A stretch of DNA of 64,000 nt from Phallusia mammillata (Eukaryota). Shown here one piece after another: positions 34,001 to 46,558 of this stretch (positions are counted from its first letter, which is position 1; each line of letters begins with the position of its first letter). The notes under the pieces were generated by a model that did no database searches, was not told where the DNA came from, and worked only from the letters and a program-made list of their open reading frames with translations. The DNA lies in the NCBI GenBank assembly GCA_965637545.1, contig OZ281499.1:5642001-5706000 (forward strand), written 5' to 3'. Made by a program: the position numbers and the translations under genes.

Positions 34001-36384
34001 ATGGATCATTATTTACTCATTAAACTTATGAACATATCTGTGTAAAAAACTGAAATGTGAAAAACACTGTTTTTGATTAAATGTTGTGCATGCAAATAAG
34101 CATTTTTTATGTGATTTACACAAACTGTGACTGCACAAATACTTGAGTTAGTTTTAGGATGTGTGTGCACTGCAAGGCACTTTTCCACATACCTTCTGTC
34201 ACTTACTTATAAGCTTAAGGACCATTGTGATAGTTTTTCCTTTCATTATTTACTTTGTCAAGAAACTTGTCATTGGGCCTAACCATACCTAAAAATGAAC
34301 ACATAAATATTGTTTTAACAGATGACAGGAATCAAAGATATAATCCCTGATTCGAAGATCAGCGCCAAGCTGTTCGATCCGTGTGGTTACTCCATGAATG
34401 GATTACTGCCTGAGGTAACTAGATGTATTGGTGCAAGAAAACTATAATCAGTTTTGACTTGTTGTTTATCGTGGTGATGGTATTTAAGCAAAAATTACTT
34501 GGACATGTGGTTTGATACTAGTGCATCGGTTCTCAAACTGGGGTCTGCTGTCCTTTAGGGGTCCGTGAGGCAATTTTTTTTTTTGGGGGGGTGGGGGCGT
34601 GAAAAGGTTAAAGTAATTCTGTAATCTTATTTGGCGTAAGTTTGTGCCACTTAATAAGTTTTATTCAAAATAGAATTGAGAATTGACAGTCTCCATTGCT
34701 AAACAATAGCCTTTACTGCATGACAACTAACAAAAATGCAATTGTTCGCGCACAATTGTAATGTTTTTTTTGTCTTGTCTGTGATATCAGATGCTGTCTT
34801 TGGATCATAGTTATGCGCAATTTTACATAACTAGCTAAAATCAGTCAACTTTCATTGTCCTGAAATACAAATTTAGGCTTTAGGAAAAAGTTTGAGAACC
34901 ACTACTAGAGGATACCGAAGAGAATTTTGTTAGTACCATTGCTGTGCATATTGTGAAACGGGAATTGCAAATCCTCTACAGGAAATCAGTGACTTCAGGC
35001 TTCCTGTACAAACACATATGACTTTAACACAGTGTGCTTTGCATGCATCTCGTAGTTAGTTCAGTACATCCTAATGTTTTGTATGACAGGGCCAATATTG
35101 GACAATTCATATTACACCCGAGGAAGAGTTTTCATATGTCAGTTTCGAAACCAATTGGAAAACTGGAAGCTATGCTGGGATAATTGAAAAAGTAGTGAAA
35201 CTATTTAAACCTGGGAGATTTACAATGACCCTCTTTGCAAACAAGGTACACAAAAGTTTTATATTATGTTTTATTTGCACATCAAAATTGTACCATTCCA
35301 GTTTCAAACAATTTTTCACACAAAAAAATTATGTTGATTTTCCTGCTAACATTTAGCTTTAGAAAGAAATGAGTCCTTGATAAAAGGATAAAGACTCAAT
35401 TTTTTAATAAATTCAAATTTGTTTCTAAAAAACCCATGAAGTTTCATTAAAGAGGTATTGAAATGGGGTATTCCAAATTTATGGTTTGATCATAAATATA
35501 TCTTTGCTAAGAAAAGCAGTTCAACTACAAAACATAATGCCAATAGCCTGAAGCTATTGTGTGCAGCCTGAAGCTATTAGTTGCAAACAACAGTACTCAG
35601 GGATTGAATTACATTAACAGTGTAGCTCACATCACAAGCCAAAACAACATTACCAGCTGTCAGCAAATGTGTTTCTGATAACAGCTGTTTAGCCAACAAG
35701 CCCTATATTGCTTCAAGTGATAGGCAACAAAAGCCTTTCATGGTTTATACTAAACATTTTCAGGTTTTGTAACTATAATATTAGCAATTTTGAAGAGAAA
35801 TCCATTAGCATTGTAAAATCCTAAGTTATGTTGTTTTAGAATTTAGCACCTAAATATAAGGCACAACACATTTCACAACAATTAATAGTATAGTCCAACA
35901 ATCAGTTACATCTTGTTTGAGGATTTTATTACACATAATCATTTCCATATACATTTATGTTTGCAGCTACAATAAATAAAACCAATGTACAATTTTTTTT
36001 TTCAAAAACCAAACTGCAAATACCCAAAATGCTATGCATTGTTACTAAATCACCATGCATGATGTCATACCTCGGTGATTTCATATATACAGGAAGCCTG
36101 CTGTTTTGGTTTCATTCCATTGACCTAAATAGCTTTCACTAAGTTGGTATGGTCAAGCCAGAAAAAACAAAAACTTTCAAGCACAACATGTTTTCATGCT
36201 ACAGTTTAATTTTGAAGTAATATTTATGTTACAGAGTTCATCTCTTGATATATCTGACTGGTGTAAGCCTGGTGGTCCATATGTAGAAGGTTTTTGCCAT
36301 CAAGACATCCAGACAGCGCGTTTACAGGATTATGGATTGTTTTACACAAATTATGCCAAGAAACAAAATATGATTAAGCAATAG
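31080..36384 (+). CDS. AMD1: S-adenosylmethionine decarboxylase proenzyme
   Basis: [20 protein letters not shown]; [23 protein letters not shown] (pyruvoyl self-cleavage site ~31746-31751); [10 protein letters not shown]; [13 protein letters not shown]; [10 protein letters not shown]; [20 protein letters not shown]. Exons start at 31080, 31593, 31745, 32194, (32722), 33575, 34322, 35091 and 36235. Confidence 0.96.
34524..34904. mobile_element. Degenerate hAT MITE in an AMD1 intron
   Basis: catcggttctcaaactg ... aagtttgagaaccacta TIRs; no clean TSD. Confidence 0.55.
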
Positions 36385-38416
36385 TGTGGAATGTGTTAAA
36401 GCAATAAAGCTACTACCAAATTGTATAAAGTCATACAATTGTAACTGTACACCAAACATCCTACACAAATACTGCACCTCGAATATCTTTCAAATAATAA
36501 CTGCAAGTCACCTGTTTTTACCATTTAGAGAAGGCTGCTGAAATTAAAATGATGTTTTTGCACAACTTTTTGTATGGGTATTGTAAATTTCTAATTGTCC
36601 ATAGTGTACAGCTCTTTTGATCTCTTAAAAAAGTAAGTTTCACACACAAAAAAACTTGTTTCTGATGTAGGATGTGTAATATATGTTTGCATTGTGTATT
36701 GTACATATGTATTAATGTGTATTGTTTTATAATGTACAGTTTATGTACATTAAACCCTTGCAGAATTACTCAAGAAGCCAACTCAGACCAGTTAGTCCAT
36801 TAGTTCCAAGTACTTTATGGCTCTGGTCCAACTTGTACAGAGCTATTCGTTTTTTCGTGTTGTTTTACCTTTATTTAATAGCTAGCTTCTGTTAAGTGTT
36901 TTTCGAAACCGGTCATCAAAATTTATTTATTCAAATTTGTGTATAAATATGGAAGAAGATTTGAGTGTAAATAAACAGTGTTTGTTGTAATCAAACTTGT
37001 TCATTTCTGATGGAGAAATGGGATGGGATATTTTCAGTAAGAGTTTATTAATTTCAGAATTTGGTATTCTTGTACAGCAAAGGTCGGCAACCTAAGCGAC
37101 TGGTGCCAATTTGCATGTTATTTCCATGTGGTAATGACTACGCGTGCCAACATTGTTCTGAGTTATAGTGGTTTGTGTCAGCTGATATCAATTTTAAGGA
37201 GAGAGCAGAGCGTTTAGTGCACGTAGACTGGATTTTAAGAGAATGGCATGATAAGAAACTAAAAACAAGCCGTGTAACATGTTAAATTTGTAGTTTACTA
37301 TGAACAGACAAATCGTTTGGCGGGTCAACAAAAATCACCTCCTTTTTTACTGAGAGAAATAAACTTGACTTAATAACACACAAAGTTAGCAACGTTAAAA
37401 CTATACACTGAGTCGAAGCACGATCAATTTGAGCGCACATCTTTCTAAATTCTGTCGGTCGAGAGAAGGGTCGGATCAAGTAGTTTATCTCCCTTAAAGC
37501 GGGTAAGAGTATGCTGACCTACACGTTACAATGGCGGTTTGTGACGTAAAAGTGAATGCCTGGCGAACGAAGCGTGGAATTATTGTTGCAAGATTAGATT
37601 TACACTTGAAAAAGACAACACAGTGAAAAAACGACTTTTACATTATTATACCACTACAAATTTGGCCGTGAAAAGTGTCTATGGTGGCTCCCTGCTTTTC
37701 TTAATTAGCACATGGTTAGTACTTTGGCTTATGGTTAATTCATTCCCAATCGCGAAAGCTATTGAAAATACCAACTATACGCTCTTCAAATATGGTTGTA
37801 AGATGTTTTTGAGCGCTCTGGCCAAAAGGCCGCTAGGTCGCGGCAACGGTGAATATATCCCTTATTTTCAATGACTGTAATGTATTTGGCAAAAATTAAC
37901 AAGTTAAACTATAAGGTAAAACGTCTTTAAAAGTTTTAGTTGGACCATTAGTTGCACAGTGACACACTTCTCTGATGCGGCTGTCCAAGTGCTGACTCTG
38001 TTACGTCACAAGTGTTAGTGAGTCAAGATAAGGATGATGCTGTACAGATGAAGACATCGTAAACATTGCAAAGGCCTTGCAGTAGGATTTTAGACTTCTG
38101 TGTTATGGCTTGCAACTTACAGGTTGACAATTTAGTCTTGGATAATGGTTTCAGATCACAATCAAGAAAGTCGGAGTAATAAGGCAGTATATTGTAAAAA
38201 GCCTAGTTATTTAGAATTGCATTGTTTAGATCTAATTGCAGTGAAGAAAAATAGCTTTATAATGCTGCAGTTTCAATAAATATTCCGCAAAGAAGCTAGA
38301 CATTTTGGCATCATTTACTTTTTTCAATTGAATGAAAAAGCGATTATTTCTTACAGAATGCAATCTTCTTTTTAATCTTGAAAAAATTGGCGACCCAGAA
38401 ATTGCCAACAGTGAAT

Positions 38417-38527
38417 ATGACGTCACCAACATCCCAAAACATTCGTATCAAGGACCTGGCGATCAACTTTGGTGTCATCGTTCTAATTCTACTTCTTCTC
38501 TACGTGGCAATCAGCGTCCTTCAGTGA
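38417..38527 (+). CDS. 36-aa single-pass micropeptide, phospholamban/sarcolipin/sarcolamban (regulin)-like
   Basis: MTSPTSQNIRIKDLAINFGVIVLILLLLYVAISVLQ*; polar N-terminus plus C-terminal ~20-aa TM helix with LxxNFxxIxxxL register; preceded by a splice acceptor (ttcttacag, 38356). Recognised by eye only. Confidence 0.7.
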   Translation: MTSPTSQNIRIKDLAINFGVIVLILLLLYVAISVLQ

Positions 38528-41500
38528 TGTCACTAAGGCTGTGTTTGAAAATCAACTTTAAAGAACTACAATAATTGAACACATCACGCTTTGTTTCACT
38601 GTACAAATGTGCTTTTGTCTGTTTTTCTTGTGTTTTGTGTTAACAGCGATTGTAATTGATGAGTAACGAACGATCTTTGTTGGGGAAGTTTAATTTAGGA
38701 CCCCCAGTTCAAACATAACGTAATTTAGTTTAACCTTTTAAACATTATTAACACCTTTTATGTTATCAAGCACAGAATTAAACTTGCACAAAGCCTGTTA
38801 TTGTTCTGTACTGCAAAGTGTAAATTGTTGATGTCAGTTTTCAGGATGTAATTAATTAAATTGTGTTGGTTGTGTCTTGCAACGAAAACAAATGGTGTTG
38901 TTGATGTCAGCGTTGTCAAATTATGTTGTATACTGTCCACAAACTGCCCGTCCCACAATAAAAAATGGTTAATTCTAGTTAGCCTACAGCAGGGTAGCAT
39001 GTATACGTGTAGTCTTCATGAGGTCATGGAGCTAGTTGGATTGTTATAAACCGGAAACAATGGTGGCATCGTTCATAAATCATTGTAAGTATACCTCTGT
39101 TATTTTGTTGTCTAAAATAGTTCGCAATACCAGACAAAAGCTTAACAAATGTTATTGCACCAACCAAGCAACGGCATAATAGATATCACATGCTATCGCA
39201 GCTTTATATTTAGACACAGTTAATTTATTGTTAGCAAAGATAAAATGAAGTTTTTTGTTTGACTGTTTTAGCAGAGCAACACAGAATTTCTGGAACTTTT
39301 TTGGTTTTGGATGTTGCTTAAAGTTGTCAAGTTATGTTATTCTGACTGTAATGCACAGTTAGTCAACAATGTAACGTTCAAAGTCAACTTTATTACCATG
39401 TAGTTACCAGCAAGCAGCCAATAAAATAGTAATTATTTTGCCAGCAGCAACGCTGTTTTGTTTGAGCATGCACATCATTGCACGATGGCACATCCATTTT
39501 AACAACTTCCTTAATTCATTACCAACAGCCAAAAACCCTGAAAGCAGATTGAGATAACGAACCGAATTGGCTTGAAGGAAATAGGAAATAGTTTGTTGTG
39601 CTGAAACTGTAGTGAACTAGTAATTCGAAGAACGGTAAAATGGCCCAATATCGTGGATTCTCTGTTCCATTGAGAGTATAAATACGCTTTAGACACGTAA
39701 AATAAAATAGTGTTTTTAGTGTTGGCGTGACAGGTAAAAATTCTGTTTGCAGCAGTCCAAGGGTGCATGACATGTAGGCCTATTGGTGGACTCATTGCCG
39801 ACCATTAGTGAAACATGAAGCTGCAATGAGACCGCACTAATAGCTCAAGCTTGTGTGCCTTTCTGATACGCGAACGAAAAAATGTAACCAACGAGTAGGG
39901 TAAAAAAGCCACACAAACCTGATTAAGCGTAGTGCAATGTGATATAACACAAAACAACCAGTCGTTTTTGTTTTACTTTCAATTTTAATAAAGTCGTGTT
40001 CGAAAGTGGTTTATAATTGTCAGGGCTGCGTATCACCAATATACTGTTCAACTGTGACAGCTTATTTGCTGTAAGACAAATAATTGTGGTTATAACCGCC
40101 TTGTTACAATCACAAGTATATACTACATGTACTTGACTACAGAGCCAACGGCAATTTGTGGCATTTGCGTGGTTTCGAAAATAATTGAGTTCCCGCCTTT
40201 TTTGCGCGGAATTCGGAAAGAATGTCGAAGCATTTTTATGTTTAAAGTTAGATGAGAAAATAACGTTAAATTTCCAATAAAGGATTATTTACCAACACTT
40301 ACTTTTACCCCAAATTTAACATATTTATCGAGGAAGAGAAATTTAAAAAAAATGTAGCACGGAATTAGTGAGCAATATTTATTGTAGTTTGATGTCATTT
40401 TAACCGGATTGGCTATAGTAACTATTGTGCAAAGATTTATATGCCTATCAAAGTGTTTGTTAAGAGTGTTTTCAAATCGCCCGAATAGGCAAACTTTTAC
40501 AAACAGGGCATGGATGAAAAGCCCACCTTCTCACAAACTTACAGCATGACAGGATACATGCGTTGTATGTTGCTGCTCTATCTGCTTGCTGTTCGCGCCA
40601 AAATGCCGAAGTCACCCCTCAGGGCATGATGCCGCACTGATAACAGACTTTCACCGGTGTTTTGTCGAGCTTTGCGCTGTTTTATTGTGTTTGAATAGTT
40701 GTTTTTGGACAAGGGTTTTACTGTACGTTGGGGGACTGTTGGTTTAGCAACAAAACCGTTGCGTTTGCGACATTCAATTGCGTTTTCTTCACAGTAACTT
40801 TCTGCAGTGTCGGCTAAGCAGGAAGTAGAAGGCTTGACTTTTATTTAATAGTTTCTTTAGTAAGAATGTCAACACTTCACGTCATTACATTATAACGTGA
40901 CATATTGAAGCTGTTTAATGTGTAAACTTGTACATGAAATAAATATTGATATGATGTAGACACTTTGCATCTTCATCTTGCATTGTAACAAGACATAGTA
41001 TTTTCAAGTCTTCTACGTGAAAGCATGCATGACTTCGATGCTTTCGAGGTTATTTGCGTTGGTGTAGGCTGGAAGGAAATGCCTGCAAGCTGTTTCATGA
41101 CGGGGCTATTGTCAGCTAATCAGGCTAGCAGTAACATTAACTGCATTCTATTGTTCAGTTGCACCTATTGAGGATTGAAAAAAACGCAACAAAGAGCATT
41201 GTGAAGACATAAGAGATAAAGAGTACAACAGTAGTAGGTAGTTGACAATTTAGTTTTGTGGTGACAATAACACCGTTTGCATTAAAGCAGGCGTTTGTTT
41301 TTGCCACTTTTGTTATTAACAATGCGTTGTATTTCTTGTATATGATAGTTGAAAGGTCGGCAAAGCACAAAGGCGCTAAATTGGCCCGTATAAAAGGTCG
41401 TACATTACTGCTATGCCCATAGGGAATAGTTTATAAAGAGCACTGTGTCCAGTGTGGCGCATTCCGGACATTTCTGGTGCTTGACGTGGTATCTGGCAAT

Positions 41501-45697: not shown

Positions 45698-46558
45698 ATG
45701 GCATGGAAACAAGGACTTTTCGGATGCTTTGGAAACTCGGGTCTATGTATTCTGGCCTGCTGTGCCTTCCCTCTGGCGGTCGGCAAGAATGCGGAAGCTG
45801 TTGGCGAGCCCAATTCAGTGCTTTGGGTCATAGCTGTTGAAGTTGCCCCTTGCATAGCTGGAGCTTTGCTCAGAGGTCTTATCAGAAAGAAAAAGGTTAG
45901 AAAACTACTGTCAAAAAGTCGTGTACAGTGCAACGGAATGTTCGTGAAAACATTGATATATTTTAACCTTTAAACTTTTTTGTTTTTCCACTTTGATTTC
46001 AATAAATACGAGCTACATTTCCTCTAGCGAATGTTTTTCTTCTCCATGCAATGCTAACGTAATATGGTGACGTAACAGTAGTGGTTTATGAGATTAATCG
46101 AACATAACTATTGTCTTTCTTTATGACAAGGGTAAAAAACCTAAACTGGTCCATTACGACTGTAAATATTGTGCAACTAAATGTATTTTTATTATTGCAT
46201 GTTGTTTGAACAGACTAGTTAATGCTACTGATTAACCTATTTGCATGCAGGCAATTTAAAGTGGTTGTGCTTTTAAAATACAATGCCCTGTATGAAAATA
46301 CGATCCACATTAACAGGCCTTGTCGACATAATTGTATTGGGTTGCATTGAATTAACTATTAGTCATAGTGTTGTTTTCCGGTTGTAACGGTATCTCTATT
46401 TGCAGGGCATTGAGGGATCGTTTTGGATGGACGTGGCTGTATGGTGGTGTGTGCCATGCTGTGCTGTTTGTCAGGAGACAGTAGAAACTGGAAGTATGGA
46501 CTACCTCCAGCAACCAGAAATGCAAGCTATCCAACGGGAGGTTACCAACACTTCTTAA
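45698..46558 (+). CDS. PLAC8/cornifelin-family Cys-rich membrane protein (116 aa, 2 exons)
   Basis: Exon 45698-45895 MAWKQGLFGCFGNSGLCILACCAFPLAVGKNAEAVGE...LLRGLIRKKK; exon 46406-46558 GIEGSFWMDVAVWWCVPCCAVCQE...*. Typical W-x-x-GLFGCF, LR..IR and GI.GS..D....C..C...QE motifs. Confidence 0.88.

What the first reader, a model, noticed from the sequence alone, without database searches (positions are those of the whole stretch)
38357..38527. Hidden 36-aa SERCA-regulator-like micropeptide (phospholamban/sarcolipin/sarcolamban family) in an apparent gene desert
Seen: ATG 38417 opens MTSPTSQNIRIKDLAINFGVIVLILLLLYVAISVLQ*, too short for the ORF track, 60 nt after a clean acceptor (ttcttacag). Known: the SERCA-facing residues of phospholamban are L31, N34, F35, I38, L42, I48/V49 and L52. 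Here L14, N17, F18, I21, L25, I32 and L35 fall in the same register without gaps. FG and the late LY also recall Drosophila sarcolamban (RNLFTTFGILAILLFFLYLIYAVL). The Ser/Thr-rich N-terminus (TSPTS) could be a phospho-switch, like PLN S16/T17 or SLN T5. Inference: an unannotated invertebrate-chordate regulin bridging arthropod sarcolamban and vertebrate PLN/SLN, possibly controlling Ca2+ uptake in muscle or heart. The frame is also open back to the acceptor (NAIFFLILKKLATQKLPTVN), so a longer spliced isoform is possible. A 5-codon out-of-frame uORF sits at 38358-38375. I cannot verify whether it is already described.
Basis: partly seen in the sequence, partly recalled or inferred. Interest (0 to 1): 0.92.

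Follow-up and report, generated by a model that had tools for sequence, protein, structure and literature searches.

The report
Phospholamban-like micropeptide gene beside AMD1
A short, unannotated but transcribed exon between the AMD1 and PLAC8-like genes carries a 36-residue membrane-anchored peptide whose membrane helix matches the calcium-pump-binding face of vertebrate phospholamban far better than chance; it is probably a sea-squirt calcium-pump regulator, but no counterpart was found in the one related species I could check.

Summary
ATG 38417 to TGA 38527 encodes the quoted 36-aa peptide, 60 nt after ttcttacAG, with a 5-codon uORF at 38358-38375.

New evidence supports a real small gene.
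- Three RNA runs from three studies cover only about 38355-38990. They leave both flanks empty, and they show AMD1 correctly spliced.
- Two contigs start exactly at the acceptor AG. An AATAAA lies 28 nt before the far contig end.
- The peptide is one predicted helix with a tail-anchor layout. It scores 19.8 bits on Pfam Phospholamban (E 5.7e-4, below the 25-bit cut-off) and hhalign E 4.4e-6, ungapped with PLN 26-49.
- The next best of 548 window ORFs scores 4.8 bits. None of 170,908 simulated ORFs and 7 of 100,000 composition-matched shuffles reach its score.

Evidence against or missing:
- No protein database holds it or a relative.
- A related species that keeps AMD1 and PLAC8 adjacent has no such ORF between them.
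- The transcript strand is inferred, not read.
- A similarity to yeast OST4 exists, with database-wide E 0.06.
- Tissue, translation and SERCA binding are untested.

Verdict: probably (about 0.47) a new tunicate member of the regulin family. It is SLN/sarcolamban-sized with a PLN-like helix, and is not a full PLN orthologue.

The parts
38341..38356 (+). Splice acceptor: pyrimidine-rich tract plus CAG (cgattatttcttacAG)
   Evidence: Sequence. RNA contigs of X1 and X3 both start at 38355, the A of this AG.
38357..38990 (+). Transcribed exon of about 634 nt, the whole assembled body of the small mRNA
   Evidence: X1 covers 38355-38862, X3 covers 38355-38794 and X8 covers 38423-38990. Depth is zero over 37000-38354 and 39000-40999 in the same runs. 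Strand is inferred, not read. The exon is unique in the window and has no Rfam match.
38358..38375 (+). 5-codon upstream ORF (MQSSF*), out of frame, 1 nt after the splice site
38417..38527 (+). 36-codon ORF plus stop. It is the second ATG and the longest ATG ORF of the exon, with A at -3 and A at +4.
   Evidence: Pfam PF04272 E 5.7e-4.
38456..38521 (+). Codons for L14-L35, the phospholamban-like transmembrane helix (LAINFGVIVLILLLLYVAISVL)
   Evidence: hhalign aligns 9-32 with PLN 26-49. AlphaFold2 predicts a helix over 4-35 with pLDDT 92. The 19-residue hydropathy of 2.87 is the highest of the three tail-anchor-like ORFs in the window.
38957..38962 (+). AATAAA polyadenylation signal
   Evidence: Sequence. 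The X8 contig ends at 38990, 28 nt downstream.
38560..38561 (+). Allelic 5-nt insertion (TCAAC) in the 3' UTR
   Evidence: table 4: seen in X3 and X7, and as a loose end in X8.

Best explanation
Positions 38357-38990 (+) are the body of a small, previously unannotated mRNA. Its 5' end is made by splicing at the AG at 38355-38356. The most likely partner is the 16-nt ascidian spliced leader, added by trans-splicing. The mRNA ends after the AATAAA at 38957. After a 5-codon uORF, the mRNA encodes a 36-residue tail-anchored peptide. The peptide has a 13-residue cytosolic N-terminus (R10, K12), one helix (L14-L35) and a single residue after it. The helix carries phospholamban's SERCA-inhibitory face in ungapped register: L14, N17, F18, I21, L25, I32 and L35 match PLN L31, N34, F35, I38, L42, V49 and L52. 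I infer that it is a tunicate member of the regulin family, sized like SLN or sarcolamban with a PLN-like helix. I infer that it sits in SERCA's M2/M6/M9 groove and lowers the pump's apparent Ca2+ affinity. Shown here: the ORF, the transcription, the sharp exon boundary and the statistical likeness. Inferred: the strand, the trans-splicing, the translation, the homology and the function.
For: The transcript is discrete. Three runs from three studies cover only 38355-38990, and in the same runs AMD1 shows its GT..AG junction, so they are RNA. ORF words are present in about 10 RNA-type runs and absent from 7 others of the same organism, so expression is not ubiquitous. X1 and X3 contigs both begin exactly at the acceptor AG with no continuation. 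This fits a de Bruijn branch between unspliced ..CAG and a short partner ending ..AAG, and the Ciona spliced leader ATTCTATTTGAATAAG ends in AAG. The right-hand ends are ragged (38794, 38862, 38990), like the AMD1 3' ends in the same runs (36882, 36908, 36976). This argues that the right side is the 3' end, and AATAAA lies 28 nt before 38990. Likeness to PLN: Pfam PF04272 is the only family found for the 36-aa peptide, at E 5.7e-4. hhalign against 25 vertebrate PLNs gives probability 86.7% and E 4.4e-6. My own PLN HMM gives 19.6 bits against 4.8 for the next ORF. None of 170,908 null ORFs and 7 of 100,000 segment-preserving shuffles reach that score. Fish PLN has Tyr46, which aligns with Y29. 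K12 falls at the PLN Gln29 / sarcolamban Lys position, and Y29 at the SLN Trp23 position described. The peptide is one confident helix. It is the most hydrophobic of only three tail-anchor-like ORFs in 64 kb. Its ESM recognition score is 2488, above the 2300 mark. The exon shows 0 base differences in about 1,511 laid bases, against 14 in about 2,537 for the AMD1 last exons and UTR in the same runs.
Against: The Pfam score is below the gathering cut-off (19.8 against 25 bits). No relative turned up in a 5.8-billion-protein word search or an exhaustive phmmer of 1.84 billion representatives. A related species (AMD1 exons 44-86% identical, PLAC8-like 55%) keeps AMD1 and PLAC8 adjacent, about 10.3 kb apart. 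Its interval has no PLN-like ORF (best in the interval 7.5 bits), no tail-anchor-like ORF and no match to the exon. Contigs have no direction, so the strand is inferred. Read on the minus strand, 38355 is followed by GTAAGA (a donor) and preceded by ATTAAA. The peptide also resembles yeast OST4 (PDB-wide E 0.06; pairwise shuffle z 7.9 against 4.9 for PLN). At genome scale (about 1,800 windows) my null predicts roughly 0.25 chance ORFs at this score. There is no evidence of translation, tissue or SERCA binding.
Confidence: 0.47

Rival explanations
1. The peptide is real and translated, but it is not a regulin. It is a lineage-restricted tail-anchored membrane micropeptide with another role, and its likeness to PLN reflects the limited vocabulary of Leu/Ile/Val-rich helices. 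This rival includes the specific variant that it is an OST4-like subunit of oligosaccharyltransferase.
For: There is no counterpart in the syntenic interval of the related species and no homologue in any database. The Pfam score is below the cut-off. Yeast OST4 matches LAIxFG...Y.A with PDB-wide E 0.06, and 0 of 20,000 shuffles reach that pairwise score. The ESM Atlas finds only generic small membrane peptides.
Against: Corrected for database size, PLN (E 5.7e-4 over all Pfam families) beats OST4 (E 0.06 over the PDB) about 100-fold. OST4 was picked after the fact as the best of 177,635 sequences. No metazoan OST4 chain, and no chain other than the yeast OST4 sequences, was among the hits at E<=10, and Pfam's Ost4 family did not appear. 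From my own knowledge, human OST4 structures are in the PDB, so a chordate OST4 should have matched them. The peptide has no polar tail after the helix, and its basic residues are on the N-side, the opposite topology to OST4 (my own knowledge of OST4). The RNA is missing from 7 RNA runs, unlike a housekeeping gene.
Confidence: 0.2
2. The exon belongs to a non-coding or untranslated RNA on the plus strand, and the ORF is a chance look-alike.
For: Expression is low: contig depth is about 9, against about 136 for AMD1. There is an upstream ATG 1 nt after the splice site. There is no conservation evidence. I estimate about 0.25 chance ORFs of this score per genome from the null tail.
Against: The look-alike would also have to fall, in sense, as the longest and first substantial ORF of a 634-nt mRNA. 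Per window the chance expectation is about 1e-4. The -3 A context is good, and the short uORF allows leaky scanning or re-initiation (general knowledge of eukaryotic translation).
Confidence: 0.16
3. The transcript is on the minus strand, so the ORF is antisense and not expressed. In this reading 38355 is either a splice donor (CT|GTAAGA) or a poly(A) site after ATTAAA (38376-38371). The 80-aa minus-strand ORF at 38761-39000 is a weak ankyrin-like relic.
For: Contigs carry no direction. The reverse complement of ttcttac is GTAAGAA. Pfam Ank_2 hits the minus-strand ORF at E 0.0025, and ankyrin-labelled clusters are its nearest ESM hits.
Against: The exon side of the putative donor (TCT) is poor, while the plus-strand acceptor has a good pyrimidine tract and CAG. 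By my rough position-weight estimate from general splice-site frequencies, this favours the acceptor by about 5 bits. There is no covered exon to the left before AMD1's own UTR, and the contigs do not run on. AMD1's true poly(A) ends in the same runs are ragged, not sharp. AATAAA sits at the other end. The ankyrin-like ORF starts at 39000, beyond all RNA coverage. Its ESM recognition is 1730, in the range of shuffled sequences, and it finds no ankyrin protein in the PDB. There are no further ankyrin-like segments upstream.
Confidence: 0.1
4. The exon is an alternative last exon of AMD1. The penultimate AMD1 exon ends ..AAG at 35245 in phase 0, so joining it to 38357 reads straight through NAIFF...VNMTSP...SVLQ*. 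That would give an AMD1 isoform lacking its last 50 residues and carrying a membrane anchor.
For: Phase and open frame fit. The AMD1 exon ends in AG, as the contig start requires. Both genes are on the same strand, with 1.4 kb between the AMD1 poly(A) signal and the acceptor.
Against: No 35245>38357 joint was reported. AMD1 contigs in X1, X3 and X8 run through 35245>36235 without a break. Phase match and an open 20-codon leader have roughly a 10% chance of occurring together. The isoform would lose part of the enzyme's core. The related species has the same AMD1 exons but no such exon.
Confidence: 0.05

Closest known systems
Phospholamban (PLN; Pfam PF04272), vertebrate cardiac SERCA inhibitor
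   Same: C-terminal transmembrane helix ending at, or one residue before, the C-terminus. The alignment to PLN 26-52 is ungapped. L31, N34, F35, I38, L42, L43, L44 and L52 are identical, and Tyr46 is shared with fish PLN. The ORF lies in a single exon of a small transcript.
   Different: 36 rather than 52 residues. It has no domain Ia helix and no R-R-x-S-T kinase site. F32 becomes A, C36/C41 become G/I, I48 becomes A, and the Leu/Ile zipper is only conservatively kept (V20, L23, L27, V30, V34). The Pfam score is below the cut-off.
Sarcolipin (SLN) and arthropod sarcolambans (SCL/SLB)
   Same: Similar size (28-45 aa). Short N-terminus with Ser/Thr. A basic residue at the start of the helix (K12, like Lys9 of bumble-bee SLB and Arg6 of SLN). 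An Asn-Phe pair as in SLN (my own knowledge). An aromatic residue at the SLN Trp23 / SLB Trp26 position.
   Different: No RSYQY luminal tail and no WLL motif (it has LLLLY). Pfam Sarcolipin PF05366 gave no hit at E<=10. I had no tool-supplied SLN or sarcolamban sequences, so this comparison rests on a paper's description and on memory.
OST4, the 36-37-aa subunit of oligosaccharyltransferase
   Same: The same length. LAIxFG and Y.A align with yeast Ost4p residues 10-15 and 25-27.
   Different: No polar cytosolic tail after the helix. The charges predict the opposite topology. No metazoan OST4 chain and no Pfam Ost4 family was hit. Expression is not ubiquitous.

Membership tests
Regulins (PLN/SLN/sarcolamban/MLN/ELN/ALN/DWORF) | Peptide under about 60 aa with one C-terminal transmembrane helix and at most a few luminal residues (tail-anchored) | tested here: met
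   36 aa. AlphaFold2 predicts a helix over 4-35 with pLDDT 92. The hydrophobic stretch is L14-L35, with one residue after it.
Regulins (PLN/SLN/sarcolamban/MLN/ELN/ALN/DWORF) | SERCA-facing residues of the inhibitory helix (PLN L31, N34, F35, I38, L42, I48, V49, L52) in register | tested here: met
6 of 8 identical, 1 conservative (V49 to I) and 1 changed (I48 to A), ungapped.
Regulins (PLN/SLN/sarcolamban/MLN/ELN/ALN/DWORF) | Binds SERCA and changes its apparent Ca2+ affinity | not testable with these tools
   No complex prediction or assay was available.
Regulins (PLN/SLN/sarcolamban/MLN/ELN/ALN/DWORF) | Expressed from a small mRNA, typically restricted to muscle, heart or other specific tissues | tested here: inconclusive
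   A small discrete mRNA is present in some RNA runs and absent from 7 others. Run identities are coded, so the tissue is unknown.
Regulins (PLN/SLN/sarcolamban/MLN/ELN/ALN/DWORF) | ORF conserved in related species | tested here: not met
   There is no counterpart in the AMD1-PLAC8 interval of the one related species reachable and none in the protein libraries. The rest of that genome, and closer relatives, could not be searched.
Phospholamban proper (Pfam PF04272) | Score at or above Pfam's gathering cut-off (25 bits) | tested here: not met
   19.8 bits for the 36-aa peptide and 21.8 bits for the frame extended to the acceptor.
Phospholamban proper (Pfam PF04272) | Cytoplasmic domain Ia with the invariant R13-R14-x-S16 kinase site | tested here: not met
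   R13, R14 and S16 are invariant in 25 PLNs. The peptide has only 13 residues before the helix and no such motif.
OST4 (Pfam PF10215) | Match to the family profile and to metazoan OST4; polar cytosolic C-terminal tail | tested here: not met
   No Ost4 family hit at E<=10. Only yeast OST4 chains were hit, at E 0.06 or weaker. The peptide ends ..SVLQ.

The most novel reading that the evidence does not exclude
The gene is young or lineage-restricted. It is absent from the conserved AMD1-PLAC8 interval of a related ascidian-like species. Yet it reproduces phospholamban's SERCA-inhibitory face, which would be a case of a micropeptide arising de novo, or diverging rapidly, and converging on the regulin solution. 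The alternative novel reading is that it is the long-missing non-vertebrate chordate regulin. From memory, human AMD1 (6q21) and PLN (6q22.31) lie on the same chromosome arm, so its position beside AMD1 could anchor orthology with PLN.
Probability: 0.1. Interest if true: 0.8.

Novelty: new member of a known kind. Interest (0 to 1): 0.55.

Why it matters
Regulins are known from vertebrates (PLN, SLN, MLN, ELN, ALN, DWORF) and arthropods (sarcolambans). In the held literature I found no description of one in tunicates or other invertebrate deuterostomes. A tunicate member with a PLN-type helix but an SLN-sized body would show what the ancestral chordate regulator looked like before PLN gained its phosphorylatable cytoplasmic domain. 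It would also provide a genetically tractable model, with a simple heart and larval tail muscle, for studying SERCA regulation. Finally, it shows that functional micropeptide genes are still missing from well-studied genome annotations.

Tried and rejected
- Exact-product look-ups of the 36-aa, 56-aa and 72-aa readings in public assemblies: none on record.
- Word-based homologue search with the 49-aa TTG reading: no candidates.
- Exhaustive phmmer against 1.84 billion representatives: 0 hits.
- ESM Atlas: only generic small membrane peptides.
- Foldseek against the PDB with the helix model: 0 matches, as expected for a single helix.
- The search for related loci in metagenomes: query too short.
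- Rfam over 36900-39600: only a chance GcvB match at E 0.12, outside the exon.
- Repeat and transposon check: the exon is unique in the window.
- Bacterial-type promoter and terminator scan: not meaningful for this genome.
- Spliced-leader sequence in the window: absent, as expected for a trans-acting RNA.
- The Magny et al. 2013 sarcolamban paper is not held, so I had no checked sarcolamban sequence.
- The minus-strand ankyrin-like ORF was considered and judged a weak or chance hit.
- OST4 orthology was considered and rejected on topology, tail, expression and the lack of metazoan or Pfam hits.
- The AMD1 fusion isoform was considered and kept as a minor rival.
Full report
**1. Observation**

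The sequence is as described.
- ATG 38417 to TGA 38525-38527 encodes MTSPTSQNIRIKDLAINFGVIVLILLLLYVAISVLQ.
- The frame is open back to 38357.
- The tract cgattatttcttacAG ends at 38356.
- A 5-codon out-of-frame uORF lies at 38358-38375.
- On the plus strand of the transcribed stretch, this ORF is the second ATG and the longest ATG ORF.

**2. Surroundings**

AMD1 lies upstream on the same strand.
- Its penultimate exon ends ..CAAG at 35245, and its last exon runs from 36235 to the stop at 36384.
- AATAAA signals follow at about 36403 and at 36970-36975.
- AMD1 identity rests on SAM_decarbox Pfam hits on homologous exon products.

A PLAC8-like ORF starts at 45698. The interval between the two genes is 9.3 kb, which is not a desert.

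**3. Transcription**

I laid four runs on 35000-40999.
- X7 is even DNA coverage.
- X1, X3 and X8 come from three studies. All three show the AMD1 GT..AG junction (reported as 35243>36233; the true exon ends are 35245|36235), so they are RNA.
- Outside AMD1, these runs cover only 38355-38862 (X1), 38355-38794 (X3) and 38423-38990 (X8).
- Depth is zero over 37000-38354 and 39000-40999.
- Contig depth is about 9, against about 136 for AMD1 in X1.
- The word shares fit the same left boundary in X2 and X4.
- The ORF region is fully held by X1, X2, X3 and X5, and is absent from seven other RNA-type runs of the same organism. Expression is therefore not ubiquitous.

**4. Strand and ends (inference)**

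Contigs have no direction, so the strand has to be inferred. Four arguments favour the plus strand.
- *Sharp left end.* Two contigs from different studies begin exactly at the A of the acceptor AG and do not continue. In a k-mer graph this is what a branch produces: unspliced ..CAG on one side and a spliced partner ending ..AAG on the other, with both side branches short. The ascidian spliced leader ATTCTATTTGAATAAG is 16 nt long and ends in AAG. Other first-stage notes report this leader in the same genome (I did not check this, and the leader is absent from this window).
- *Ragged right end.* The right ends are 38794, 38862 and 38990. AMD1's true 3' ends in the same runs are similarly ragged (36976, 36882, 36908) and fall short of the poly(A) site.
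- *Poly(A) signal.* AATAAA at 38957-38962 lies 28 nt before the farthest contig end.
- *Weak minus-strand donor.* On the minus strand the boundary reads TCT|GTAAGA. Its exon side is poor, and no covered exon lies to the left before AMD1's own UTR.

The minus-strand 80-aa ORF (38761-39000) has a weak Ank_2 hit at E 0.0025. However:
- it starts beyond all RNA coverage;
- its ESM recognition is 1730, in the range of shuffled sequences;
- it finds no ankyrin protein in the PDB;
- it has no companion repeats upstream.

I put the plus strand at about 0.85-0.9.

Whether the 5' partner is the spliced leader, an unseen exon or AMD1's exon is open. The AMD1 exon would fit: it is in phase 0 and would read through in frame. 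No such joint was reported.

**5. The peptide**

AlphaFold2 predicts one helix over residues 4-35 with mean pLDDT 92. The basic residues R10 and K12 precede the hydrophobic stretch L14-L35, and only Q36 follows it. This is a tail-anchor layout with the N-terminus in the cytosol, the layout of PLN, SLN and the sarcolambans. Only three ATG ORFs of 22-90 aa in the whole window have this layout, and this one is the most hydrophobic.

**6. Likeness to phospholamban**

| Test | Result |
|---|---|
| Pfam, 36-aa peptide | Only PF04272 Phospholamban: E 5.7e-4, 19.8 bits (cut-off 25) |
| Pfam, frame extended to the acceptor | 21.8 bits |
| hhalign against 25 database PLNs | Residues 9-32 on PLN 26-49, ungapped; probability 86.7%, E 4.4e-6 |
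| HMM built from the 25 PLNs | 19.6 bits; next best of 548 window ORFs scores 4.8 |
| 100,000 whole-peptide shuffles | None reach 19.6 bits (maximum 16.0) |
| 100,000 shuffles keeping N-terminus and helix composition | 7 reach 19.6 bits |
| 170,908 ORFs from 300 simulated windows | None reach 19.6 bits (maximum 15.7) |

Identical positions include PLN's invariant L31, N34, F35, I38, L42, L43 and L44, plus L52 and fish Tyr46.

Extrapolating the null tail gives about 1e-4 chance ORFs of this score per window and about 0.25 per genome. The likeness alone is therefore suggestive rather than conclusive at genome scale. It becomes persuasive only together with the independent fact that the ORF is the main ORF of a discrete small mRNA.

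**7. What it is not**

It is not a full PLN.
- R13, R14 and S16 are invariant in PLN and have no counterpart here.
- The peptide is the size of SLN or a sarcolamban.

A paper on sarcolambans describes a Lys at the start of the helix, equivalent to PLN Gln29, and an aromatic residue at SLN Trp23. K12 and Y29 fall at exactly those positions.

**8. The OST4 rival**

phmmer against the PDB finds yeast OST4 (36 aa) at E 0.06. In a pairwise shuffle test the match to the displayed OST4 fragment is stronger (z 7.9) than the match to single PLN sequences (z about 4.9).

I reject OST4 orthology for five reasons.
- OST4 was selected after the fact as the best of 177,635 sequences, and its database-wide E is about 100-fold weaker than PLN's.
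- No metazoan OST4 chain and no Pfam Ost4 family appears among the hits. From my own knowledge, human OST4 structures are in the PDB, so a chordate OST4 should have matched them.
- There is no polar tail after the helix.
- The charges predict the opposite topology.
- The RNA is not ubiquitous.

**9. Conservation**

No database holds the peptide or a relative.

Using an AMD1 exon as bait, I found a 586-kb ENA contig of a related species and walked along it.
- All AMD1 exons are collinear, at 44-86% identity.
- A PLAC8-like gene follows on the same strand, at 55% identity.
- About 10.3 kb separates the two genes.

That interval contains none of the following:
- a PLN-like ORF (the best HMM score on any frame segment within the interval is 7.5 bits; 9.0 anywhere in the stitched 32 kb);
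- a tail-anchor-like ORF;
- a blastn, tblastn or tblastx match to the exon.

The species are too diverged for non-coding conservation, and the gene could lie elsewhere in that genome. Positional conservation is nonetheless not supported.

Within the species, the exon showed no base differences in about 1,511 laid bases. The AMD1 last exons and UTR showed 14 differences in about 2,537 bases in the same runs. This is a weak hint of constraint, because the alleles are not independent.

**10. Literature**

Full-text searches found no tunicate, amphioxus or other invertebrate-deuterostome regulin. Reviews list PLN, SLN, sarcolambans, MLN, ELN, ALN and DWORF only.

**11. Verdict**

| Reading | Probability |
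|---|---|
| Unannotated regulin-type micropeptide gene, probably SL-trans-spliced, acting on SERCA | about 0.47 |
| Real micropeptide of another kind | 0.20 |
| Untranslated look-alike on the plus strand | 0.16 |
| Minus-strand transcript | 0.10 |
| AMD1 alternative last exon | 0.05 |

If the best reading is true, this is a new member of a known kind. It is interesting for regulin evolution but not unexpected, given the claimed insect-to-human conservation.

Noticed in passing
window 35245 / 38357: The penultimate AMD1 exon ends in phase 0 with ..AAG. Joined to the acceptor at 38357, it would read in frame through the 20-codon leader into the micropeptide ORF. That would be a possible membrane-anchored AMD1 isoform. 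No such joint was seen.
   Followed up: partly
window 38761-39015 (-): An 80/85-aa minus-strand ORF in the same transcribed exon gives a weak ankyrin-repeat hit (Ank_2 E 0.0025), and its nearest ESM clusters are ankyrin-labelled. Its recognition score is low and it has no companion repeats. It is probably chance or a relic.
   Followed up: yes
window 38418-38425; 37542-37549; 38001-38008: A perfect palindromic CRE (TGACGTCA) overlaps the start codon. Two TGACGTAA/TTACGTCA CRE-like sites lie in the 1.4 kb upstream of the acceptor, where a promoter would be expected.
   Followed up: no
window 38560/38561: A 5-nt TCAAC insertion allele in the 3' UTR is present in RNA run X3 and DNA run X7, and appears as a loose end in X8. 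Otherwise the exon showed no base differences, while the AMD1 3' UTR showed several.
   Followed up: partly
L001:1571-11628 and L009:9977-12564 (ENA ERZ25067576 ctg10654): A related species keeps AMD1 (same exon order) and a PLAC8-like gene adjacent on the same strand, about 10.3 kb apart. This is conserved micro-synteny, although no nucleotide similarity is detectable in the interval.
   Followed up: yes
run X24: A run labelled as a different organism ('organism B') holds about a fifth of the 31-mers of the ORF region. This is the share expected at roughly 5% divergence, so it may be a sibling species carrying the gene.
   Followed up: no
window 38378: An in-frame TTG 13 codons upstream would give a 49-aa product starting (M)KKLATQKLPTVN. 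KKLAT loosely recalls PLN's RRAST. The extension adds only 2 bits to the Pfam score, and there is no evidence that it is used.
   Followed up: partly
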